Shown: positions 7,987 through 46,299 of the stretch, piece by piece
How the letters are laid out: each line of letters begins with the position of its first letter
How positions within the stretch are numbered: position 1 is the first letter of the stretch
Source: Octopus sinensis
Taxonomy: Eukaryota
DNA: 64,000 nt
Assembly (NCBI RefSeq): GCF_006345805.1
Contig: NC_043004.1
Coordinates: 105,896,001-105,960,000 of the forward strand
Direction of reading: 5' to 3'
Notes under the pieces: model-generated
The model's input: the letters and a program-made list of their open reading frames with translations, nothing else
Databases searched by the model: none
What the model was told of the DNA's origin: nothing
Position numbers and translations under genes: made by a program

Positions 7987-8526
7987 TATGTACATACATA
8001 ATACAGGTCTCTACATGCTTGAGGTGTCCCCACACTGTGTACAGCTGGTATTTTACAATAGCAATACTACAACTAGATCTACACACTTGCAACATCAGAG
8101 CTCCTACATAGTCACTCCTCATGCTAGAAATAGCAACCAATCTCCCTTGGATCACATATCACCCTCTTAAAAAGAAGAAAAATGGGAAGAATCCAAATTA
8201 AATAATGTAGCTGCATGTAACCCACAAAATGACAGAACAGGGTACCTTTAACCATAGGTATCAATCAGGGTTTACTTGGGGCCAAGCAGTGACAACAACA
8301 ACAGCAAATGGTAGCAGCAGACTAGACAGTACATGCCATGCATAACTATATTTGGTTGGCTTCTATACACCTGACACTACCCCCACCCCCACAAATACAC
8401 ATGTAGGATTTCATGGTGACAGTAGTAGTTTACTTAAGCACAGTTGCATACCAACTCTTGTATTGTCTGTAACCTTGTGGTTTTTGGTCCTGTAATATTT
8501 CAACAGAGATATGGTAACACTATTAC

Positions 8527-9680: not shown

Positions 9681-9914
9681 TTTTTATTTTTTTAATATTT
9701 CATTTTGTCCTTTTTCTACATTGTCCATCGTTTTTTACTTCATTGTCCAATTCTGTCATCTTTCATTCTTAGCTTTTGGTTTCCCCATCGCTAATTGCTA
9801 ACTTCTCAAGTATCACTTCCTTCTACCTTGTCATTCCTCCTAAATTAGCTCTGCCTCTCTTAGCATAGCAATCCCTCTCACCATCCTACTATGGCATTAC
9901 CCTGTTATCTCTCT

Positions 9915-10070
9915 GTAAAATGGTTGGCATTAGGAAAGACATCCAGTTGTAGAAACCACATCTAAACAGACAGTAGAGCTTGACATGGTCCTGAGACTTG
10001 CCAATTCCTGTCAAACTGTCCAACCAAAGGCAGCATGGAAAATGGATGTTAAATGATGATGACGGTGATG
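9915..10070 (+). mobile_element. Family C, seeding the adjacent (GAT)n array
   Basis: Core and tail motifs run directly into 10053-10305. Confidence 0.8.
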
Positions 10071-10116
10071 ATGATGATGATGATGATGATGCTGATGATG
10101 ATGATGGTGGTGGTGG

Positions 10117-10152
<36 letters not shown>

Positions 10153-10305
10153 CGGTGATGATGATGATGACGGTGACAGTGACGATGACGATGACGATGA
10201 CGATGATGATGATGACGGTGGTGGTGGTGGTGGTGGTGGTGATGGTGATGATGATGATGATGATGACAACGACAACGAGGATGATGATGCTGATGATGAT
10301 GATTA
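10053..10305. repeat. (GAT)/(GGT)/(GAC) trinucleotide array
   Basis: Direct reading; extends the tail of a family C SINE. Confidence 0.98.
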
Positions 10306-12719: not shown

Positions 12720-13347
12720 GAATAATAATAATATTAATAAAAACATTGTGTACAGTGCTCAGGTGCACTACAACTCAACTAAAGTGTATATATAATCAGG
12801 TGTAGTTTTGGTGGATTTCGGAAAGCATGAGGGCCTTAAAGGATGCAGTGTCATGGCAGTCAATAACTGACGCAGGCAGTTTGTTCCATGCTTCAGCAAC
12901 TCTGAGCGTGAAAAAATGTTTCCGAAAGTCATGGGAGCTGTGTTGTTTTCTGACTTTGTAGGCATGTCCACGTGTGTTAGACACATGAAGATCAAAAAGG
13001 TGTTCAGTGTTGTTGTTGGTGAGGTGGTTGATAACTTTGTGGGTGTTTACCAAGTCCATCGCCAGATGCCGGAGCTTCAGTGAATCCATGCCCAGGGAAA
13101 CAAGGCGCTCAGAATATGGTAGGTGTCTGATGGAGGGTATGCGTTTGGTTGCACGTCTCTGAACAGATTCCAGGAGGTCAATGTTCTGAGCAAGATAGGG
13201 GTTCCAAACTGATGATGCGAATTCCAAGTATGGTCGTACCATAGCTGTATACAGTTTTAAATAGATGGCTGGAGAGCGGCTAACAAAAGTCTTGCTGAGT
13301 GATGCCAAGACACCCTCGGCCTTCTTGACAATTTTAGAGATATGCTT
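12720..13347 (-). mobile_element. 5'-truncated CR1-like LINE (RT C-terminus, 3' UTR, (TTA)n tail)
   Basis: ORF 12796-13410 has LYTAMVRPYLEFASSVWNPY, LESVQRRATK and RVAEAWNKLP; its poly-Leu N-terminus comes from an adjacent (AAT)n tract. Confidence 0.9.
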
Positions 13348-13429
13348 TGTCCAACGCATTATGAATAATAATAATAATAATAACAACAACAACAATAATA
13401 ATAAAAACAACTAAAACAACAATAATAAA

Positions 13430-14165
13430 TGCCCTAATGCAGTACCAGGCACTGGCTCTCATGGCTTCTCAACTGATTTGAATTGTTATCATGTAGATTG
13501 TTTTGTCTTGGTATAAAAGATGGGCAACAGTAAATATTCTGCTCAATACCACAGATTTGCTTGTCAGTTGTTTGACCTTAACCAGTTGAGCATGTCCCTT
13601 AGTGACTGACGATATGTGCATCTCTGATCACGAGTAGAAGTAGTGGGGGAGCATCATAGCCATGTGTTGAGAGGGATTCTTTGGGGTTTGAATAATTCAC
13701 CTCTGGAAACATGGGTGTTCCATTCAACATACTTAAACAACCCTTATTCAGGGATCTTTTGAGCAGGTGGACTATTCAATGTGAAAAAAAATTCTAACTG
13801 GGTTCCACTTGCAAGGTCATCATCATCATCGTCATCGTTTAACGTCCGTTTTCCGTGCTAGCACAGGTTGGACAGTTCGACCGGGGTCTGGGAAGCCAGG
13901 GCTGCACCAGGCTCCAGTCTGATCTGGCAGAGTTTCTACAGCTGGATGCCCTTCCTAACGCCAACCACTCCACGAGTGTAGTGAGTGCTTTTTACGTGCC
14001 ACCTGCACAGGTGCCAGGCGAGGCTGGCAATGGCTACGGTCGGTTGGTGCTTTTGAGATCACCATGTCATGCATGATGGCTATATTGGGCTTCATATATT
14101 TTACCCCAGTCTCAGTTTCATAGCATGCACAGCTTTCTCACTCAATAATAATAATAATAATAACT
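13430..14165 (+). mobile_element. ~550-bp non-autonomous retroposon with (AAT)n tail, interrupted by a family C SINE
   Basis: 13430-13817 and 14054-14165 are collinear with 14405-14663 and with the reverse complement of 35678-36187. Confidence 0.8.
13818..14053 (-). mobile_element. Family C nested in the (AAT)n-tailed element
   Basis: Reverse complement of family C; (CAT)n tail begins at the host AAGGTCAT. Confidence 0.9.
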
Positions 14166-21045: not shown

Positions 21046-21320
21046 TAAAGGGTAAGAAGAAGAGGTCAAAAGCCAGAAGAGACAGATAAGTTCTGAGACA
21101 GTGATTTGGCCTTCAATGAACCACATAAAAACAAGAGTCGTCACTGATGACTCAACAATCAAAAAAAGGTTGTAAGTTGGAGTAACAGGTAGATTCTAAA
21201 GGTGTATTAGATGTTTTGGCCCAGCTGTTTTGGTACTGGCAGTTTAGAATCTCTAACTCATTTTGCATTAGATATTTTAATATTTCTCTCATTCTGTCTC
21301 TTTCTCTCTCTCTCTCTCTC

Positions 21321-24666: not shown

Positions 24667-24784
24667 CCTCAAGATGCAGAGGAGACATGTATCGTCCATA
24701 ACTTCCAGCCCCATCGTGTAGTCCAACCTCACCAATGCCTTGTGTGTAAAAAAATAATATGGAACCAAGGTAGTTCCTGCGTAG
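24667..24784 (+). CDS. Internal coding exon, N-terminal part of an atypical C1 (zinc-finger) domain; tensin-like host gene
   Basis: Branch-like CTAAT (24636-40), polypyrimidine tract and TTCAG acceptor; donor TAG|GTAAGT at 24785. Stop-free, phase 0 to 1: PQDAEETCIVHNFQPHRVVQPHQCLVCKKIIWNQGSSCV+G, giving H-X12-C-X2-C-X10-C. Confidence 0.9.
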
Positions 24785-25636
24785 GTAAGTAAACTTTGTG
24801 TATGGTATTGGCCCTGCCTCTTTGGCATCACTGATTTGACACTGACTTATTTAACTTAAGATGTTTCAATGTTTCTCTCATTTTCTCTCCCCTCTTCTCT
24901 CCTTCTGCCTCTCTTTATGTGTATGAGAAGGAAAGTGATGATGTCAGTTGTGTTCAATCAATAAATTGTAATGTCTCTCTCTCCCTCTCTCTCTCCCCCC
25001 TCTCTCCAGTGCCAAAAATTATTGCCACTAAAACAAGTTCAGTGTCCAGTCAGCAATGCCAAGTCGTCAGCGTCCAAACAGTAGCATCTAACATCTCATT
25101 CCAATCTTTATATTGGAATAATCATATATCTCTCCGTAAAAAAAAAAAAAACCTTGTATATCCATTTTGAATCTGTGAAGTATTCCTTGACAAATGTTGA
25201 AGTGAAATGACACCATAAGCCTTCAGTTCCAAATCAAAAGAAGCTGGCATTTCTTTTTATGTGTTTGGATGTATGGAAAGCTTCTTTAATTTTTAATTTT
25301 ACAGAAACTCAGTTCATTTCACAGTCAGAAATAGATATCAGACTATCTAAGAAAGGTTCCTAAGATAGATTGTGGTCTCGTCCAACAAAAAACCTTTAAT
25401 TTTTTTCTGCTACACCACCAGTCTTTACTACTTCTAATACTTAAAAAATATTTACACCTAATGTGTACTTGTTATATATATTTTATGTAAAATGGTAAAT
25501 AGTAAAGTCAGAATATAACAGTCCACTGCTGGAAATATCCTTCTTCATTCATGAAAGGTTTTAGTTGTATCAATCCATTAACTTGACAATGACTGAGCAT
25601 TCTGTCAGTCTTGATACTCATTTTGGTCAGCTAAGT

Positions 25637-25857
25637 CATCATCATCATCATTTAACTTTCGTTTTCCATGCTGGCATAAGTTGGACAGTTTGACTGAAAA
25701 CTGATAAGCCAGGGAGCTGCACTAGGTTCCAATCTGATTTGGCAGGGTTTCTATGGCTGGATGCCCTTTCTAATGCCAACCACTCTGAGAGTGTAATGGG
25801 TGTTTTTTACATGCCACTGACACAGGTGCCATTGACCTGACGCCAGCATTGACCATA
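25637..25857 (-). mobile_element. Family C
   Basis: Reverse complement of tail and core. Confidence 0.87.
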
Positions 25858-25897
25858 ATGTTCTGGATTAATTTGAAGTCAAAGACATACTGCACCT

Positions 25898-26360
25898 CAT
25901 TATCATCATCATCATCGTTTAACGTCCGTTTTCCATGCTAGCATGGGTTGGATGGTTTGACCGAGGTCTGGGAAGCCAGGAGGCTGCACCAGGCTTCAGT
26001 CTGATCTGGCAGTGTTTCTACAGCTGGATGCCCTTCCTAATGCCAACCACTCCGTGAGTGTAGTGGGTGCTTTTTACATGCCACCAGCACAGGTGCCAAG
26101 GAAGGCTGGCAACAGCCATGATCGGTTGGTGCTTTTTACGTGCCACCGGCATGGAAGCCAGTCAAGGTGGCGCTGGCATCGACCACATACGGATGGTGGT
26201 TTTTTTAAATGCCACCGGTACAGGTGCCAAGGGAGGCTGGTAACGGCCACGATCGGTTGGTGGTTTTTATGTGCCACCGACACAGAAGCCAGTCAAGGCA
26301 GCGCTAGCATCAGCCACATAAGGATGGTGCTTTTTACATGTCACCAGCACAGGTGCCAGG
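25898..26360 (-). mobile_element. Family C with a five-module 5' repeat array
   Basis: Tail and core 25898-26070, then ABABA modules each starting GGTGCTTTTTAC.TGCCACC. Confidence 0.9.
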
Positions 26361-26457
26361 ATAACTCAAACTCATAACCTCATTACTAAGAACCTTAAGG
26401 CAGCAAGCTGAAAGAATTGTTAATGAAGTCTGACAAAATGTTGTTGTTGCTCATTTC

Positions 26458-26720
26458 TTCTCAAGCCATGCCTGGCTCATAAGGGCCGGTTTCCCGGTAT
26501 CATTGGCATATAAGTTCCCTACCTGGACAGGATGCCGATCTGCTACAGGTAAGCTGCTGGATGCAAGGGGAAAGAGTGAAAGAAAGTTGTGGCAAAAGAA
26601 TCAGCAGAAGTTCTGCCGGAGCTGCATGGAGCTTAGGTGTTTCGCTCATAAACACACACATCACCTGGTCTGAGATTTGAATACATGATCCCTCGACTTC
26701 TCTAACCACCAGGCCATGTG
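26458..26720 (-). mobile_element. tRNA SINE, head Y with V-domain-like tail
   Basis: Collinear with 16975-17250. Confidence 0.85.
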
Positions 26721-26990
26721 CCCCCACTGACAAAAATGCTTAGCAGCATTGTTTTCCAAGATTATGAACAAAGCAATACAACATATCTATTTTCATTTGA
26801 ACATATTTCTAGAATCTCATAACAATATTTTTCAGAAATTCAGGTTTTTTTAAATCCTGCCAAGGTCAACTTTATCTTTCATCCTTTCAAAGTTGATAAA
26901 ATATGCACCAGTTGACCACTAGGATTGATATGATCGACTTAGCCACCTCCCTCAAATTGTTGGTCTTGTGCCAAAATTTAAAACCATTAT
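26720..26990 (+). mobile_element. SINE family B, fragmented
   Basis: Head fragment at 26720-26760 and core plus tail at 26865-26990. Confidence 0.7.
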
Positions 26991-27445
26991 CAAGATGCCA
27001 GTTTCCTAACCTCTAAGCCCTGTATCTTCTCATTTCTCATCTCCTCCTCATTCACTATTTTTACTTTACCAAGGTATTTGAAATTTATACTCTTCACAAA
27101 GTTCTAAATATGCCCTCATTCCACAGTTACTATAGTATTCATTAAGGTCACATACACCACTCCCAGCAACTGCTCTGCTCCTAAAGTTCTACATGTGCTT
27201 ACCCCACCAAGCAGTTACTGTATTGTTTACTGATTCCTACGTATAATCTCTCTCAGTTAATACCTTATAAATGATGATTCACATGTTCTCTACATTTTTA
27301 CCATGCATACTTGTACAGGTACTAACTTCTACATGCATACTTGTATAGGTACTGAATTGTCCTTGAAACCTCATACACATGCCTGATTGGTGTACTCTGG
27401 CACGCATGAGCTTCCAAAATTATTTTACAACATCTTTTGATCTAC

Positions 27446-27605
27446 CAGTTGTGTAGCTAGAGTGTGTGATACCTGGAGAAGCCCTTGAGTTTCCCCACCT
27501 CTGTAGGCCCTGAAGCCTTCACAAATTTATCCAGCAGACCCAAAAGTGCCACCCCATAAAAGCATCACCCAGAGTAGACTGCTCCCTACCCAAGTAATGC
27601 TACTG
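27446..27605. mobile_element. ~160-bp MITE with CAGTRGCRTAGC-type termini
   Basis: Shares GCCCTTGAGTTTCC, CAGACC.AAAAGT and ATAAAAG..CCCAGAG with 55984-56147 and ~8986-9150. Confidence 0.5.
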
Positions 27606-27654
27606 TGGTGACCCTTGTAATATTCTTTAGAAGCACACAGTCCGTACTGTAAAG

Positions 27655-27839
27655 TAGTTGATGTTAGAAAGATCATCCAACCATAAAGTCCCATGCTAAA
27701 GTAAAGAGGTTGGTGTCAGCAAGGGCATCCAGCCATAAAAACCATGCCAGAGCAGACACTGAAACTCCATGTGATCCTTGAGACACATTGGACCCTATCA
27801 AACTGTCCAACCCATACTAGTATGGAAAATGGACAGCAA

Positions 27840-27885
<46 letters not shown>

Positions 27886-27900
27886 CGACGACGATAATGA
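27655..27900 (+). mobile_element. Family C, diverged, with (GAT)n tail
   Basis: GGTTGGTGTCAGCAAGGGCATCCAGCC core and tail. Confidence 0.8.
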
Positions 27901-28339
27901 TGATTCTTTAAGGGCCATTACAATATATATGAGTCCATTTTACTCTTCGCTCTGACTGATATACACATTCATTGAACTCCTTCAATTGAAGGGCAAGGAT
28001 CGAACTGTTAACCTTTGGATTTATACCAAATGTATTTTATTTATTTGAGTTGTAAAAATCCTGTTGAAACAGACACAGAAGTCTGATGCAGGCTTCTGCC
28101 TTGCTGACTCTTGTGGTACCATTCCGCCCATGCCAGCATGGAAGACAGATGTTAAACGATGACAATGATGATGATGATATTCTTAAGAGAAGAAAAGCAA
28201 GAATATTACGTGTGGGTGTATGTAGTGGGGTGTTTCCTGGATTACAAGAGTTTAGTCAGTTGGTAAAGGAAATTGGTATGGTTAATACCAATTGGTTAAT
28301 TTTTGTTAGAATGAGGGTGAAGGGCAGACAGAAGCGTTT

Positions 28340-28605
28340 GGATGTTGGGCAAAATGCTTAGCAGTATTTCATCCATTTTAATGTTCTGAGTTCAAATGCC
28401 ATCAGGGTCAACTTTGCCTTTTTACCTTTCAGGGTCAATAAAATAAGTACTAGATGAGTACTGGAGGTCAATGTAATCGACTAGCCTGCTCCCCTGAACT
28501 TGTTGGCCTTGGGCCAAAATTTGAAACCAATATTTGGTAAAATTAAGGTGGCAAGCTGGCAGAATTGTTAGCATGCTTGGTGAAATGCTTAGCGATATTT
28601 TGGTA
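28340..28605 (+). mobile_element. SINE family B plus an adjacent head fragment
   Basis: Full core and tail 28340-28530; second head 28545-28605. Confidence 0.85.
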
Positions 28606-29362
28606 ACAGTTTATGAAGACAAGTTTCTCAATCAAGATTGCTGAAAGAAAATAGAGCTCATTAGTGAATGAATTTATAATTAGAGGGGCTGGATGTTAAC
28701 CTAATAATTTAATGAGAGAATTCCTGAAAAGTATGCCATCCACAAGCATAGTTAGGTGGGGTTTGGTAGGAGTGATCAGTCCCAGGTGACACTATAGGGT
28801 CTGCTGTAGGCAATATATGTTTTTTAATGGGGTCCAGGGGCAACAAACAGAAGGGCCACTCAAGCTACACTAGTGATGCAATCCATTTATGAAACTAACA
28901 TATCTTACCAATGAAACTGTACTAATGAAGCTATAGTATTTAATAAGTAATAGTTTTGTTCTCTCTCAAAAATTGGTTATCAATAAGTAAAGAATTAAGA
29001 AAGGAAAACAAACAGAAATATCTCTGATATTTGTGAAAGGATTTTCCATTCAGAATATTGAACTTTTGAACCTGTCTGCTTATGAGAAATGGGGGTTCTT
29101 TTTATCTCTTCACTAACCCCACCCAACAGGAGGGCTTTATACTGTTATCACTTTGAGTTCTATGAGGGGAAAAGGAGCAGAACAGGGTGGAGTGAATGCC
29201 ACCCACTCCCTCAACGACCACCACCAGTTCAGATACAAAGGTTAATATAGAAATTAATCAGTAAGGGCAGGTAAAAATATGGATAGACAGTTGGGTGGGG
29301 GAAGTGGTTTCCAACCTTGTTTTCTAGCAGATCCCTCACCTATTTCAGGTAAATGTGTGTGC

Positions 29363-29397
<35 letters not shown>

Positions 29398-30044
29398 GTG
29401 TGCATGTATGTGTGCATGTGTATGATGAGAGAGAGAAAGAACAGTTTTTAGCATAAGAAAAGTGTTTAAATGTCAGGCCAACTGAAATTGAGGGAAACAC
29501 AACCATAAACACACATACACACACACACACACATACACACACACATACACACACACATACACACACACACACACTCACTCATTTACTCACTCACGCACAC
29601 ACTCACTCACTCACGCACACGCACACACACATGCACACATACACACACACATGTACACATGCACACATGCACAGATATACACACATTCAAACACATGCAC
29701 ATACACACATACAGACATACACTCAAACACACACACACGCACACGCATGCACACGCAAGCATGCACACACACACACAAATTTCCAAGTAGAAACTTGAAC
29801 CCAGTACAGAGGACTCAACGTGTCAAACATCAAAAATATATTCTTATTGTTAATGTCTGCAAATTCTCCATTGCTTCAGTTTTATTGCCAAAGAAGCAAT
29901 CATCAGATGGTATATCAATAAAGAAATGTTTTGAAAGCATTTAAGCCATTTGTTTGTTCATATACCATCTGTTGACAGCCTATGTGGGAAGAAATTCAAA
30001 GTAATGGAAAAATAGTTAACTTTGATAATAGATGCCACATTAAA

Positions 30045-30270
30045 AGCGCTGGTGCTGTGCCACATAAAAAGGCACACATGCTGGTGCCACTTTAAAACCC
30101 CTCAGTACACTTTGTAAAATAGTTGGCATTAGAAAGGGTATGCAGCCAAAGAAACCATGCCAGAACAGACGATGGTGCTTGGTGCAGCCCTTGGCCTTAC
30201 CAGCTCCAGTCAAAGTGTCTAACCCATACCAGCATGGAAAATGGACATTAAATGGTGATGATGATGATGA
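30045..30270 (+). mobile_element. Family C
   Basis: Core and CCAGCATGGAAAATGGACATTAAA(TGA)n tail. Confidence 0.82.
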
Positions 30271-30754
30271 TGCTGGTGGTGGTGGTGGTGGTGTCATCGG
30301 CGGCAGCAGTGGTAGGGAAGATGGTGATGGTGATGATGATGATGATGATGATGATACACAATCACAGCTTTCACTCACAAGCAAGTGTAACTTGGCAGTG
30401 TGTACCATGCTTTAACTAATTGTTTCAGGTGCCCATGTAGTCACAAGTCACCCAGTCAGCCCTCTAATCCCTGATCCCTGATCCAGCAGATCATCCAAAA
30501 CATGACAGCTTGAAGTGAAGAATACTATGCCAGCACTCACCTGGTGCAGCCCTCGTTTCATTTCAACCGATTAGATTGGAACAAGGTGAGATGAAGTGTC
30601 TTGCTCAAGGGTACATACAACATGCTGCCTGCTTCAAAAACCAAACCCAAAACCCTATAATCATGAGCCCAACATCCTTAAGCCATACACATTCCTGTAT
30701 ACACACGCATTCATATGCATGTGTGTATACATGTTATATTTTGCAAAAGCATGT

Positions 30755-30900
30755 CTAAGAACGAGGAGATATTACCTTGGTTGGAAGCAGATGAAGATTG
30801 GTGACAAGAAGAGCATCAGGTTGTAGAAAATCTATCTCTATCTGACCCATGCTGACATTCAAATGTGAATGTTAAAATGGTGATGATGACGATGATGATG
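30755..30900 (+). mobile_element. SINE family D, 3' part
   Basis: GAGATATTACCTTGGTTGGAAGCAG..GATTGGTGACAAGAAGAGCATC. Confidence 0.65.
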
Positions 30901-31204
30901 ATAATGATGATGATCATCATCATCATTATCATCATCCTCATAATCATGATGACGATGAGGAGGAGGATGGTTATGATGATATATTGACATGTGATGAATA
31001 GCAGCAGTATAAAAAGAGTTCTGTGTGTGTTCAAAGTAGAAGAGACAGGCTAAGCAAGTCAGAAGATGAAATGGTAAAGACGTTCTCAAGAAGCTAATCC
31101 TCATAAAAGGAGATGACATAGGACCATGACCCTTGATCCTTCACTTAATTTCCTTCTGGTTGAAAACCATACTGTATTATATTACTCATGTATGCTGCAT
31201 ACTG

Positions 31205-31400
31205 GTTTCAGATTTTGGCACAAGGCCAGCAAATTCAGGAAAGGTAGCAAGTCAATTACATTAACCCCAGGGCTCAACCGGTACTTATTTTATTGATCCC
31301 AAAAGGATGAAATGTGAAGTAAACCTCAGTGGAATTTGAACTCAGAACATAAAGATGGATGAAACACTACAAAGCATTTTCCCCAGCTCACCACCTTACG
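31205..31400 (-). mobile_element. SINE family B
   Basis: Reverse complement of the family B consensus. Confidence 0.85.
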
Positions 31401-31622
31401 ATGTATGCCACATGCTACCATTTTTCTGTACAAAGAGAGAAACCTTTTTGTTGTTAACATATACAGCATTTTTCTAACCATCTTATGGAGATGCAGTGAA
31501 CCAGGAGGAAAGGGTCAGTGATGTCAATGGCTGAGAGGCCCTACCGGAAGAGGAAGGGTCAGTGACCTTAAGTGGGTAGAAGTAGGACCAGCATGAGTGT
31601 TCTTTGGATTTGGGCAGTAGGG

Positions 31623-31892
31623 GCAGAATGATGCCATGCAGACATGTGAGCTAGAAAGGGAATTTGCTGTAGGTTCTAGTGATAGGTTAGACAGGTAGGG
31701 TTCATCTCAGATATAACCCAGTTGGACAGTCAACACTGAGAAGAAGGTGAATCACAACAGTTTCTCATATTTCTCAACCCTCCCTCTCTCTCTCTCTCTC
31801 AAACTATTACTAATTAATAATTACTAACCACATTTCCAGTGCTAATTATGACTTTTTCTTTTTATGATTTAATCAAAATAGGTAAGACAGTG
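31623..31892. repeat. Local direct repeat, copy 1 (~270 bp)
   Basis: Highly similar to 32983-33248, including the (CT)n tract and AT-rich flank. Confidence 0.95.
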
Positions 31893-32285
31893 CTCATAAC
31901 TTTTTTGCAGGATCCCTGAAACCTGGGGGAAATGGAGAAAAGTGCTTATAGGTTACAATGAGTAGGAAGCAGTTTGTTTAGATACACAGTTATGAATTAG
32001 TCCGAGTAACCAAACTGGACTATTTTTGTAAACCATTTCAGTTATCCATTTTTCTTAATTCCTATCTATTTATTCAGTTACTGTATTCTTGTATAAAGGT
32101 ATACAAGTGTTATGTGTCTAACTGTCCAGTGATACTGAACAAATCCTGTACATGTGAGATATTTTCTGGTTTAGAAAAGCATTGATAAAAACACATGCAA
32201 AGCAGATATTTTATATGATTTTCCTTCAGTGAATATTTTTTCTAAATCCTCTCTCATCCAATTTTTTTCCATGTTTTTTTTGTAG

Positions 32286-32323
32286 ATTGTCACATTATTT
32301 GTCACAGGAAATGTGAAACAGAG
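32286..32323 (+). CDS. 38-nt coding microexon continuing the C1 domain
   Basis: T-rich tract and TGTAG acceptor; donor GAG|GTAGGT. Phase 1 to 0; with the upstream G it reads DCHIICHRKCETE, completing C-X2-C-X4-H-X2-C in frame with 24667-24784. Confidence 0.9.
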
Positions 32324-39740: not shown

Positions 39741-40140
39741 TGTTATAAAACTAAGTAAAAGCACCTGCCACTCTTGGCATTGCTGGTAGGTGAGCTGTGA
39801 GGCTAAACAAATGTTACCATCACATCTGAAATGCCTGGTTGTCCATCTTTAAGCGAAAGCAACTGGCTGAGCTATGTCTTACCAATTCTGAAACACCGTA
39901 GAGTCTTAAACAAATAAATTATAAAAAACAAAAAAAAAATTGTTGAAACCTACGTAAAAGAAAAGAAACAATAAAGAAACAAACACCATACCCTCTCTTC
40001 ACCAAAAGTCCAGGGAAAGAGGTGGAAAAAGAAAAACAAACAACACAGCAAGGACAATTTTACTTGGTTTAAGAATCAAACTACAGGTAGTTGTGTGGTA
40101 ACATTCTCAGATTTTTCGTGAGTCTCATACTGTTCCAACC

Positions 40141-40206
40141 ATGCTGAAGTTTGCACACAACCGGCAACAGAGCAGTCAACAGAAAACTGAAAAATCTTCT
40201 AAAAAG
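40141..40206 (+). CDS. Candidate alternative first coding exon (MLKFAHNRQQSSQQKTEKSSKK)
   Basis: CAACC-ATG start context, 22 stop-free non-repetitive codons, strong AAG|GTAAGG donor in phase 0, inside a SINE-free island. Product not recognised. Confidence 0.55.
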
Positions 40207-42470: not shown

Positions 42471-43638
42471 AATAATGAAATAATAATAATGAAATTATTG
42501 TATACAGTGCTCAGATGCACCACAATTTGTCAAAAGTGCATATAAAGCATATGAAGTAATGTACAAATGTCTGGAAAGCGAACAGTGTATGAGACAGATA
42601 CATGCTTGTGTGTGTATGGAGGGGAGAAAATCAGGTGTAGTGTTGGCAAATCTCAGGAAGCATGGAAGTTTTGAAGGATGCAGTTTTGAAGGATGCATGG
42701 AAGTTTTGAAGGATGAAGTTTTGAAGGATGCCAGCAGTTTGTTCCATACTTCAGCAACTCTTAGCATGAAAAAATGTTTCCGAAAGTTATGGGAGCTGTG
42801 CTGTTTTCTGGCTTTGTAAACATGTCCACAAGTGTTAGACAGGTGGAGTTTGAAAAGGTGCTCAGAGTTATCGTTAGTAAGATGGTTATTAATTTTATGA
42901 GTGTCTGCCAAGTCAGCTGCCAAACGTTGGAGTTTCAATGTATCCATGACCAGAGAAGTAAGGCGTTCAGAATATGGCAAATACCTGATGGAGGGTATTC
43001 TCTTGGTTGCATGTCACTGAACAGTTTCCAGATGATTAATATCCTGGGCAAGATAGGGGTTCCAGACCAGTGATGTAAATTCCAGGTGAGGCCACACCAT
43101 AGCTATATAAATCCTCAGATAGATAGCCGGAGAGCAGCTCACAAAGGACTTAGTGAGTGATGCCAAGACACCCTCAGCCTTCTTGGCAATTTTAGCAATG
43201 TCCAGTTTTGTCCAGCGCAAATCGCTGTCGACAATAATGCCCAGGTCACGTTCACAAGAAAACTTTTTGAGATTAGTGTTGTGGAGGGAGTAAGTAGATG
43301 CTGGGTTTCTCCTCCCAAAATGCATGGTGGTACATTTGTCCACAGCCAGCTTGAGTTGCCAGTCCATGATCCACTGCAGCATTGTGTCCAGGTCTGATTG
43401 CAATAAAGATCTATAGTGTACAGGATCTGTCCTCTTTATTTCGAGGTACAACTTGATGTCATCTGCATATTTCAGCACTGTGGCATTCTTTAAGTTGGCA
43501 TCTATGTCATTAACATATGCAACAAATATAAGGGGGCCAAGAACAGATCTCTGTGGTACACCAGATGTCATCTCATAGGGTGAAGAGTGCTGTCCTAGAA
43601 CTGTGACAACCTCTTTTCAGCTGATAATGAAGGATAAT
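42471..43638 (-). mobile_element. 5'-truncated CR1-like LINE, frameshifted reverse transcriptase
   Basis: ORF 43014-43571 has SGVPQRSVLGP, KYADD and ERDLGIIVDS; ORF 42495-42980 continues YSERL and RKHFFMLRVAEVWNKL; same 3' tail as 12720. Confidence 0.92.
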
Positions 43639-45318: not shown

Positions 45319-45904
45319 AAACACGCATATATATGTGTGGGTGTGGGCGTGTGTCTTTGTGGCTGTGTTTATCCTCTCAAGCAATTGATTCACAAGTGGT
45401 ATAGGTTTGTTCACTTGCTCATTTACACCCTTTCAGGTGGTACTCCAGTATAGCCACAGTCCAATGACTAAATCAAGTAAAAGATAAAAACAAAATATAC
45501 AACATACATACACCACATTACATACTTTTACATGTGCATTTAATGAGCAAATTATTACGTTGCTCAGAGAACTGGCTGTCCATCATTGGAATCTGTGGAA
45601 CATCCAGCAATAATGGCACCAATAAACAATCTCTATTCACATGCTTCTCTTCTAAAATCTAGAAATGTAACATGTCTTCTTCCTTTTCTTATTTATTGTT
45701 TTTGTTGTTGTATTACCCACATGTCAATCTCGATAATATACATCTATAATAAACTCTACTCCACCTACGCAGGTTCATTCCCCGCCCCCTTTCAGATGTA
45801 GTGTATTGATGACTACATTGTCTAATGTATTCTTTCTTTTCTAAGTTACCTATATAAAATGCATATAAGATGCATGGACATATTAGGTGCACCTGATTTC
45901 AGCA

Positions 45905-46250
45905 GTGCATTATCATCATTTGACATCCGTTTTTCCATGCTGGTATGGATTGGTTGGTTTGCCTAGAGCTGGTGAGCTGGAGGGATGCACCAGGTTCCAG
46001 TCATCTGTTTTGGTTTGGTTTCCATGGCTAGATGCGCTTCCTAATGCCAACCACTTAACAGAGTGTGATGGGCTTTTCTTACATAGCACCAGCACAGGTG
46101 CTTTTTCTGTGGCACCAGCACTGGTGTTTCTTACATGGCACCGGCACAGGTGCCATGTACCCACTGGCATGGGTACTTCCTACATGGTACCAGCACAGGT
46201 GCCATGTACCCACTGGCATGGGTACTTTCTACATGGTACCAGCACAAGCA
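45905..46250 (-). mobile_element. Family C with ~49-bp 5' minisatellite modules
   Basis: CAGCACAGGTGCCATGTACCCACTGGCATGGGTACTT repeated at ~46140 and ~46190. Confidence 0.87.
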
Positions 46251-46299
46251 TATTCAGGAAAAAGATTTTAATGCATTAAAGTTTGTAATATTGGTTTCG

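What the first reader, a model, noticed from the sequence alone, without database searches (positions are those of the whole stretch)
24667..32323. Hidden host gene: two small exons splice into an atypical C1 domain
Neither exon is in the ORF track. Joined, they read HNFQPHRVVQPHQCLVCKKIIWNQGSSCVDCHIICHRKCETE, i.e. H-X12-C-X2-C-X10-C-X2-C-X4-H-X2-C, with consensus splice sites and matching phases across a 7.5-kb intron. The loop is 3 residues shorter than PKC-type C1 (X13) and has Asn where PKC has Gly23, predicting no diacylglycerol binding. The X10 spacing and the CHRKCE motif match my recollection of tensin N-terminal C1 domains. The upstream exon and the exon with the final Cys were not found in the window.
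Basis: partly seen in the sequence, partly recalled or inferred. Interest (0 to 1): 0.72.

Follow-up and report, generated by a model that had tools for sequence, protein, structure and literature searches.

The report
Octopus tensin gene: C1-domain exons

Summary
Exon A (24667-24784) and exon B (32286-32323) have strong canonical splice sites. They join in frame to a 52-residue peptide that passes Pfam's C1_1 threshold (34.5 bits against 26.5).

The peptide, junction included, is 100% identical to residues 86-137 of Octopus sinensis RefSeq protein XP_029639798.1 ("tensin-2 isoform X16", 1736 aa). It also matches a 1932-aa isoform of that gene, and it is 95% identical to an Argonauta hians tensin model. 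The full protein has the tensin architecture: C1, PTEN-like phosphatase/C2, SH2 and PTB.

All 83 C1-bearing tensin relatives examined, from cnidarians to vertebrates, share the short X10 loop. All 16 aligned sequences keep the Cys-His pair, and most read CH[RK]KCE. The tensin label is therefore supported.

Alignments to solved DAG-binding C1 domains show a 3-residue deletion and Asn in place of the groove glycine. That makes loss of DAG binding a reasonable inference, but it was not tested.

The neighbouring exons, upstream and the one carrying the last Cys, are not in the window. The window is about 95.5% identical to the syntenic Octopus vulgaris locus. The intron is filled with SINE-like repeats and microsatellites.

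Nothing here is new. It was "hidden" only from a bacterial-style ORF track. One side result: the C1 domain appears ancestral to the tensin family, contrary to a recent review.

The parts
24667..24784 (+). Coding exon A of the octopus tensin gene (118 nt, starts in phase 0, ends one base into a codon). It encodes PQDAEETCIVHNFQPHRVVQPHQCLVCKKIIWNQGSSCV plus the first base of Asp. It carries C1 zinc ligands His1, Cys14, Cys17 and Cys31 (PKC-delta C1B numbering).
   Evidence: Sequence and splice sites. It is 100% identical to P0003 residues 86-124. It is 95% identical in the Sepia pharaonis model P0004, which reads on into the intron at the same boundary. Exon A alone scores 21.3 bits against C1_1.
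24785..32285 (+). Intron of 7501 nt, running from GTAAGT to a polypyrimidine tract and TAG. It is filled with SINE-like dispersed repeats carrying (ATG)n/(CAT)n tails in both orientations, a 131-nt tandem duplication and an (AC)n array.
   Evidence: It is colinear with the O. vulgaris intron at about 92-95% identity.
32286..32323 (+). Coding exon B (38 nt, ends in phase 0). It encodes (D)CHIICHRKCETE and carries zinc ligands Cys34, His39 and Cys42. The eighth ligand, Cys50, lies in the next exon, outside the window.
   Evidence: It is 100% identical to P0003 residues 124-137. The continuation VMTTC... is seen in P0001, P0003 and P0039 but not in the window.
40111..40206 (+). Doubtful candidate alternative exon (96 nt, in frame, AG|...|GTAAGG) encoding IFRESHTVPTMLKFAHNRQQSSQQKTEKSSKK. 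Only the short O. vulgaris model 'kinase C-like 1' uses it. It is probably not part of the main tensin mRNA.
   Evidence: It is single-copy. The model that uses it is unreliable at both ends when laid on this window.

Best explanation
The window is intronic and 5'-proximal DNA of the single tensin gene of an octopus. The species is very close to Octopus vulgaris and is most likely O. sinensis.

Exons A and B are two constitutive coding exons of the long, C1-containing tensin isoforms. After splicing they encode seven of the eight zinc ligands of an N-terminal C1 zinc finger. The next exon, more than 31 kb downstream and outside the window, supplies the last Cys. That exon leads on into the PTEN-like phosphatase and C2 domains, a long disordered linker, and the C-terminal SH2-PTB pair.

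The domain is an atypical C1. It folds like PKC, Munc13 and RAF C1 domains and should hold two Zn2+ ions. Its beta3-beta4 loop is 3 residues shorter, and it has Asn where DAG-binding C1 domains have the groove glycine. The most likely role is therefore protein-protein contact, general membrane contact or localisation next to the phosphatase-C2 unit, rather than diacylglycerol or phorbol-ester sensing.

- **Shown here:** the exons, the frame, the C1 family membership, the identity to annotated tensin isoforms, and the conserved X10 loop.
- **Inferred:** the lack of DAG binding, the zinc stoichiometry, the functional role, and the physical continuity of this window with the rest of the gene, which rests on RefSeq models.
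For: - **Exon structure and frame:**
- **C1 family:** Pfam C1_1 scores 34.5 bits against a cut-off of 26.5.
- **Match to annotated tensin:** 100% identity over all 52 residues, junction included, to P0003. This is XP_029639798.1, tensin-2 isoform X16, O. sinensis. The same holds for P0039, tensin-1 isoform X6 of that species. Argonauta hians tensin-1-like X6 is 95% identical over 65 residues.
- **Tensin architecture:** P0003 has C1_1, PTEN_C2, SH2 and PTB, plus a sub-threshold DSP-phosphatase hit.
- **Wide conservation:** 2425 homologues of the N-terminal region were found. C1-bearing ones occur in molluscs, amphioxus, chelicerates, cnidarians, a brachiopod, an echinoderm and vertebrates.
- **Tensin-type C1 signature:** all 83 with a C1 have X10 and X7 spacing. 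The eight zinc ligands are invariant in the 16-sequence alignment, together with Phe, Gly and the extra Cys before the second His.
- **Profile test:** a tensin-C1 profile built without cephalopods scores the window peptide at 48.5 bits, higher than the general Pfam model does.
- **Fold:** the AlphaFold model has pLDDT 83.6. Its best PDB matches are the Munc13-1 C1, the MgcRacGAP atypical C1, PKC-theta C1a and the RAF1 CRD, at rmsd 1.0-1.9 A.
- **Atypical features:** the 3-residue gap and Asn opposite Gly appear in alignments to DAG-binding C1 domains.
- **Literature:** the tensin-2 C1 is described as atypical (PMC10315744). Atypical C1 domains lack lipid binding and may mediate protein contacts (PMC2427238). 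A conserved Gly and Gln are critical for DAG binding (bioRxiv 10.1101/2022.03.11.483953).
- **Synteny:** the O. vulgaris locus is colinear at 95.5% identity with both exons identical.
Against: - No RNA-level evidence could be obtained here. No transcript-derived contigs turned up, and the O. sinensis genomic record could not be fetched.
- The O. vulgaris annotation places the two exons in a separate 134-aa gene, 'kinase C-like 1', and not in tensin.
- Pro11 and Gln27, two other residues associated with ligand binding in typical C1 domains, are retained (alignment). The loss of DAG binding is therefore not certain.
- Exon identity between the two octopus species is uninformative. Perfect-match runs of this length are common across the whole locus.
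Confidence: 0.93

Rival explanations
1. The two exons belong to a separate small gene for a stand-alone, truncated C1 protein of about 134 aa. This is how O. vulgaris annotates them (CAI9727084.1, 'kinase C-like 1'). In that model a tiny first exon lies at about 21147, the 40111-40206 exon follows exon B, and a terminal exon lies further downstream.
For: The O. vulgaris gene model exists and uses exons A and B with the same junction. The 40111-40206 segment is open, in frame, single-copy and has usable splice sites.
Against: - In this window the model's first exon has one extra A (A7 against A6), so it is out of frame with exon A.
- Its terminal exon lies in a 738-bp segment of O. vulgaris that is absent from the window.
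- The product would lack the eighth zinc ligand.
- RefSeq models in O. sinensis and Argonauta join the same exons to a full tensin.
- The C1-phosphatase-C2-SH2-PTB order is conserved from cnidarians to vertebrates.
Confidence: 0.05
2. The exons encode the C1 domain of some other C1-containing protein, such as PKC, chimaerin, Munc13, RAF or a Rho-GAP, and the tensin label is wrong.
For: On sequence alone, the best solved-structure matches are Munc13-1, chimaerin and PKC-delta C1 domains. O. vulgaris names its model 'kinase C-like'.
Against: Those matches are only about 30-40% identical and need a 3-residue gap. The 100% matches are tensin isoforms with the full tensin architecture. The X10 loop is shared with 83 of 83 tensin C1 domains. 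No kinase, GAP or MUN-domain exon was found in the window.
Confidence: 0.01
3. This is a chance pattern or a decayed pseudo-exon pair that is not expressed.
For: Both pieces are short, and neither has a start codon or an ORF call.
Against: Pfam scores E = 1.8e-8. Both splice-site pairs are intact and the phases match. Protein conservation is 95% in Argonauta and cuttlefish, and all zinc ligands are kept across metazoan tensins.
Confidence: 0.01

Closest known systems
Tensin family N-terminal C1 domain (human TNS2/C1-TEN; C1-bearing TNS1 isoform models in vertebrates; invertebrate tensins)
   Same: - The spacing is the same: H-X12-C-X2-C-X10-C-X2-C-X4-H-X2-C-X7-C.
- The Cys-His pair is invariant in the 16 aligned sequences, and most tensin C1 domains read CH[RK]KCE.
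- The C1 sits directly upstream of the PTEN-like phosphatase/C2 unit, with SH2-PTB at the C-terminus.
   Different: - The cephalopod C1 is fairly divergent: 34-55% identity to other tensin C1 domains. For example it reads VDCHIIC where most have RVC[KR]xxC.
- The octopus protein keeps an intact HCKGGKGR phosphatase motif, whereas vertebrate tensin-1 models have HNKGNRGR.
- It is the single invertebrate tensin and not an orthologue of TNS2 in particular. RefSeq calls one isoform of the gene 'tensin-1' and another 'tensin-2'.
Typical DAG/phorbol-ester-binding C1 domains (PKC-delta C1B, Munc13-1 C1, chimaerin C1)
   Same: The zinc-ligand pattern and the fold are shared (TM about 0.7-0.8, rmsd about 1 A). 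By alignment, the Pro before the second ligand, the Trp, and the Gln-Gly after the loop are retained.
   Different: The loop between the second and third Cys pairs has 10 residues, not 13. The groove Gly is Asn. These are features of atypical C1 domains, which do not bind DAG (PMC2427238; bioRxiv 10.1101/2022.03.11.483953).
Atypical C1 domains with shortened loops (RAF1/KSR cysteine-rich domain, MgcRacGAP C1)
   Same: They are among the closest structural matches (4b6d, 6xi7). They also have a shortened ligand-groove loop, and they act in protein or general membrane contacts and not in DAG sensing (general knowledge; PMC2427238).
   Different: Only about 30% sequence identity, a different protein context, and no evidence here for Ras or Rho partners.

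Membership tests
C1 domain (Pfam PF00130, C1_1) | Score above the curated Pfam gathering threshold | tested here: met
   34.5 bits against a cut-off of 26.5, E = 1.8e-8, profile positions 1-44 of 53. The complete domain in P0001 scores 36.5 bits.
C1 domain (Pfam PF00130, C1_1) | Eight zinc ligands in the pattern H-X12-C-X2-C-Xn-C-X2-C-X4-H-X2-C-X7-C | tested here: met
   Seven ligands are encoded in the window. The eighth (VMTTC) lies in the next exon, seen in P0001, P0003 and P0039 but outside the window.
C1 domain (Pfam PF00130, C1_1) | C1 fold | tested here: met
   The AlphaFold2 model has pLDDT 83.6. The listed Foldseek matches are C1 domains, and the best have rmsd 1.0-1.9 A.
Typical (DAG/phorbol-binding) C1 | 13-14 residues between the second and third Cys pairs | tested here: not met
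   There are 10 residues. A 3-residue gap appears against Munc13-1 and chimaerin.
Typical (DAG/phorbol-binding) C1 | Conserved groove glycine (Gly23 of PKC-delta C1B) and Gln27 | tested here: not met
   Asn aligns with the Gly. The Gln is retained. The importance of the Gly and Gln is stated in bioRxiv 10.1101/2022.03.11.483953.
Typical (DAG/phorbol-binding) C1 | Measured binding of phorbol ester or DAG | not testable with these tools
   This needs a binding assay on the recombinant domain.
Tensin family | PTEN-like phosphatase + C2 at the N-terminus and SH2 + PTB at the C-terminus of the same protein | tested here: met
   P0003 contains the window's 52 residues at 100% identity. It has PTEN_C2 (119.7 bits), SH2 (35.2 bits), PTB (110.5 bits) and C1_1 (32.6 bits). 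These domains are encoded outside the window.
Tensin family | The window's exons are physically part of that gene | tested here: inconclusive
   RefSeq models in O. sinensis and Argonauta join them. The O. vulgaris annotation splits them off. Genomic DNA of the O. sinensis locus and transcript reads could not be fetched.
Tensin family | Tensin-type C1 signature (X10 loop, extra Cys before the second His, mostly CH[RK]KCE) | tested here: met
   83 of 83 C1-bearing homologues have X10 and X7 spacing. The Cys-His pair is invariant in the 16-sequence alignment. A tensin-C1 profile built without cephalopods scores 48.5 bits.
Tensin-2 (TNS2) orthologue specifically | One-to-one orthology with vertebrate TNS2 and not with TNS1 or TNS3 | tested here: inconclusive
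   Isoforms of the same octopus protein set are named both 'tensin-1' and 'tensin-2'. The best vertebrate matches are named tensin-1. No tree was built. The gene most likely predates the vertebrate paralogue split.

The most novel reading that the evidence does not exclude
The octopus exons are one instance of an ancestral, metazoan-wide tensin C1 module with a fixed short X10 loop.

- The module is present in cnidarians, molluscs, a brachiopod, chelicerates, an echinoderm and amphioxus. In the cnidarian, mollusc and amphioxus proteins where the motif was found, it sits next to an intact CX5R phosphatase motif.
- It is also present in vertebrate proteins named tensin-1, which carry the TNS1-type HNKGNRGR motif.
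- This contradicts the statement in a 2025 review that the C1 is unique to TNS2 and a late, lineage-specific acquisition.

Its strict conservation without the DAG-binding features would point to a still-unknown conserved ligand or partner.
Probability: 0.7. Interest if true: 0.3.

Novelty: already known. Interest (0 to 1): 0.12.

Why it matters
For the scan, this shows that reading splice sites and zinc-finger spacing by eye can recover real eukaryotic exons that a bacterial-style ORF track misses. It also identifies the window as octopus tensin-gene DNA.

Biologically it adds nothing new. The gene and its C1-containing isoforms are in RefSeq.

The only wider point is comparative. The same short-loop C1 occurs in tensins from cnidarians to vertebrates, including models named tensin-1. 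The C1 is therefore very probably ancestral to the family. A recent review calls it a late TNS2-specific gain (PMC12383349). The function of this conserved atypical C1 remains unknown (PMC10315744).

Tried and rejected
1. **Next exon by pattern.** I scanned downstream for an acceptor followed by 3-5 codons and a Cys. It gave 20 unconvincing candidates. tblastn with the real continuation (VMTTC...) then showed the exon is not in the window.
2. **Upstream exons.** The N-termini of four cephalopod models gave no significant match. A weak look-alike at 8154-8279 (E = 0.02) contains stop codons and has no donor site, so it was rejected as chance.
3. **Selection test from two octopus species.** Using O. 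vulgaris against the window was uninformative. Perfect-match runs of 150 nt or more are common at 95.5% overall identity.
4. **DNA from other species.** The O. sinensis and cuttlefish loci could not be fetched, because they were not on record or the gene range was too long.
5. **Transcript-derived protein fragments spanning the junction.** None were found.
6. **Non-coding RNAs.** An Rfam search at gathering thresholds and ARAGORN found none in the window.
7. **Literature search for Pro11/Gly23/Gln27.** It returned only unrelated papers.
8. **Sub-threshold Pfam hit.** The hit of the tensin phosphatase region to a 'polymorphic toxin system DSP-PTPase' model scores 25.9 bits against a cut-off of 27. 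It is ordinary phosphatase-fold similarity and was not pursued.


Full report
**What is in the sequence**

The window is AT-rich (about 37-38% G+C) and full of microsatellites, SINE-like repeats and reverse-transcriptase fragments. It looks like animal genomic DNA.

At the reported coordinates there are two short open segments with textbook splice signals.

- Exon A is 24667-24784 (118 nt). A 24-nt polypyrimidine tract ending in CAG precedes it, and GTAAGT follows it.
- Exon B is 32286-32323 (38 nt). TTTTTTTCCATGTTTTTTTTGTAG precedes it, and GTAGGT follows it.
- Exon A ends one base into a codon and exon B supplies the other two (G|AT, Asp).
- The join reads PQDAEETCIVHNFQPHRVVQPHQCLVCKKIIWNQGSSCVDCHIICHRKCETE with no stop.
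- Neither frame is listed as an ORF, even at a 20-aa minimum. That explains why the exons were "not in the ORF track".

**Is it a C1 domain?**

Yes, on three lines of evidence.

- The spliced peptide scores 34.5 bits on Pfam C1_1 (cut-off 26.5, E = 1.8e-8), covering profile positions 1-44 of 53.
- Against solved structures, the best sequence matches are C1 domains of Munc13-1, chimaerins, PKC-delta and MgcRacGAP.
- An AlphaFold2 model of the complete domain was built from a 16-sequence tensin-C1 alignment. Its pLDDT is 83.6. It superposes on the Munc13-1 C1, the MgcRacGAP atypical C1, PKC-theta C1a and the RAF1 cysteine-rich domain at 1.0-1.9 A.

**Which gene?**

A full HMMER scan of 1.84 billion representative proteins found three proteins 100% identical over all 52 residues, junction included. 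A fourth was 95% identical over exon A.

| Id | Length | Source and name |
|---|---|---|
| P0003 | 1736 aa | XP_029639798.1, "tensin-2 isoform X16", Octopus sinensis |
| P0002 | 134 aa | CAI9727084.1, "kinase C-like 1", Octopus vulgaris |
| P0001 | 127 aa | an unnamed UniParc entry |
| P0004 | 172 aa | a Sepia (Acanthosepion) pharaonis model that reads on into the intron at exactly the exon A boundary |

Further searches added a 1932-aa "tensin-1 isoform X6" of O. sinensis. They also added "tensin-1-like isoform X6" of Argonauta hians, which is 95% identical over 65 residues.

P0003 has C1_1, PTEN_C2, SH2 and PTB domains, plus a sub-threshold dual-specificity phosphatase hit. That is the tensin architecture, so the tensin label is supported.

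The window holds only these two exons of the long protein. The upstream exons of all four models are absent, and so is the next exon (VMTTCTPTGG..., which carries the eighth zinc ligand).

**Which organism?**

The O. vulgaris locus (OX597821.1, fetched as L001) is colinear with window positions 11628-64000. Identity is 95.5% over 51.7 kb, and both exons and their splice sites are identical. The window is therefore from a very close relative of O. vulgaris, most likely O. sinensis. This could not be checked directly.

**Does the C1 look like a tensin C1?**

The N-terminal 405 residues of P0003 find 2425 homologues. Among the 120 best, 83 have a recognisable C1. All 83 have the X10 loop and the X7 tail.

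They include gastropods, bivalves, amphioxus, a horseshoe crab, a scorpion, sea anemones, Lingula, a sea star, and vertebrate proteins named tensin-1.

In a 16-sequence alignment the eight zinc ligands are invariant, along with a Phe, a Gly and an extra Cys just before the second His. The following Glu is nearly invariant, and most sequences read CH[RK]KCE.

A profile built only from non-cephalopod tensin C1 domains scores the window peptide at 48.5 bits. That is higher than the generic Pfam model gives, but lower than other tensin-like C1 fragments get (about 70 bits). The cephalopod domain is a somewhat divergent member.

**Does it bind DAG?**

Alignments to Munc13-1 and chimaerin, which are DAG-binding (typical) C1 domains by general knowledge, place a 3-residue gap right after Trp-Asn. 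They put the Asn opposite the groove Gly. The Pro before the second ligand and the Gln-Gly after the loop are retained.

- Typical C1 domains bind DAG in a cleft in which a conserved Gly and Gln are critical (bioRxiv 10.1101/2022.03.11.483953).
- Atypical C1 domains lack these features and may serve protein-protein contacts (PMC2427238).
- The tensin-2 C1 is described as atypical, of undefined function, and able to localise to the nucleus on its own (PMC10315744).

The prediction that this domain does not bind DAG is therefore reasonable, but it was not tested here.

**Rival readings**

The O. vulgaris annotation makes the two exons part of a stand-alone 134-aa gene. Laid on this window, that model fails at both ends.

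- Its 24-nt first exon has an extra A here and falls out of frame.
- Its last exon lies in a 738-bp segment that the window lacks.

Its fourth exon (window 40111-40206) is open, in frame, single-copy and has usable splice sites. It might be a rare alternative exon, but nothing else supports it.

The deep conservation of the C1-phosphatase-C2-SH2-PTB order argues for the RefSeq joined model.

**Limits**

No transcript evidence could be obtained with these tools. The junction therefore rests on matching gene models from several annotation projects and on protein conservation.

**Side result**

A 2025 review states that the C1 is unique to TNS2 and suggests a late, lineage-specific acquisition (PMC12383349). 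The data here point the other way.

- Cnidarian, mollusc and amphioxus tensins carry the same C1 next to an intact HCKGGKGR or HCKGGRGR phosphatase motif.
- Vertebrate models with the TNS1-type HNKGNRGR motif also carry it.

The C1 is very probably ancestral to the family.

**Verdict**

The feature is an ordinary, already annotated part of the octopus tensin gene.

Noticed in passing
window 40111-40206 (+): A 96-nt open, in-frame, single-copy segment with AG and GTAAGG splice sites, encoding IFRESHTVPTMLKFAHNRQQSSQQKTEKSSKK. Only the short O. vulgaris model 'kinase C-like 1' uses it as an exon after exon B. If spliced in, it would separate the C1 from its last Cys. It lies in a 404-nt block identical to O. 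vulgaris.
   Followed up: partly
window 21147-21171 (+): This is the putative first exon (MTQQSKKV) of the O. vulgaris short model. The window has A7 where O. vulgaris has A6, so here it is out of frame with exon A. It is probably a spurious or non-coding start.
   Followed up: yes
window 59394/59395, against L001 50183-50920: A 738-bp segment is present in O. vulgaris but absent from the window. It contains the terminal exon of the O. vulgaris short model and ends in a long AT/AC microsatellite. This is an insertion or deletion difference between the two species.
   Followed up: yes
window 24785-32285, and dispersed elsewhere (e.g. 9889-10275, 13825-13884, 25636-26359, 27798-27905, 30040-30408, 45887-46279): There are many copies, in both orientations, of a SINE-like dispersed repeat with (ATG)n/(CAT)n tails. 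They include a 131-nt tandem duplication at 26071-26332. These repeats generate the spurious long ORFs with poly-Ser, poly-Asp or poly-His runs.
   Followed up: partly
window 12796-13410 (-) and 42495-43571 (-): Fragments of non-LTR retrotransposon reverse transcriptase. Pfam RVT_1 scores 47.9 bits for 43014-43571. The two loci share the C-terminal motif '...TRGH.YK.RKQHSSH.FRKHFF.LRVAE.WNKL'.
   Followed up: partly
P0003 residues 290-300 (outside the window): The octopus tensin keeps an intact PTEN-type CX5R motif (VVIHCKGGKGR), as do the cnidarian, amphioxus and other mollusc tensins in which the motif was found. Vertebrate tensin-1 models have HNKGNRGR. The octopus enzyme may be catalytically active.
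   Followed up: partly
homologues (not in the window): A C1 domain with the same X10 loop occurs in tensins of cnidarians, molluscs, a brachiopod, chelicerates, an echinoderm and amphioxus. It also occurs in vertebrate models named tensin-1. This conflicts with a 2025 review (PMC12383349) that calls the C1 unique to TNS2 and a late acquisition.
   Followed up: partly
window 8154-8279 (+): A weak resemblance (E = 0.02) to the conserved cephalopod upstream exon (...RNRYISGISW). It contains two stop codons and lacks a donor site, and was judged to be chance.
   Followed up: yes
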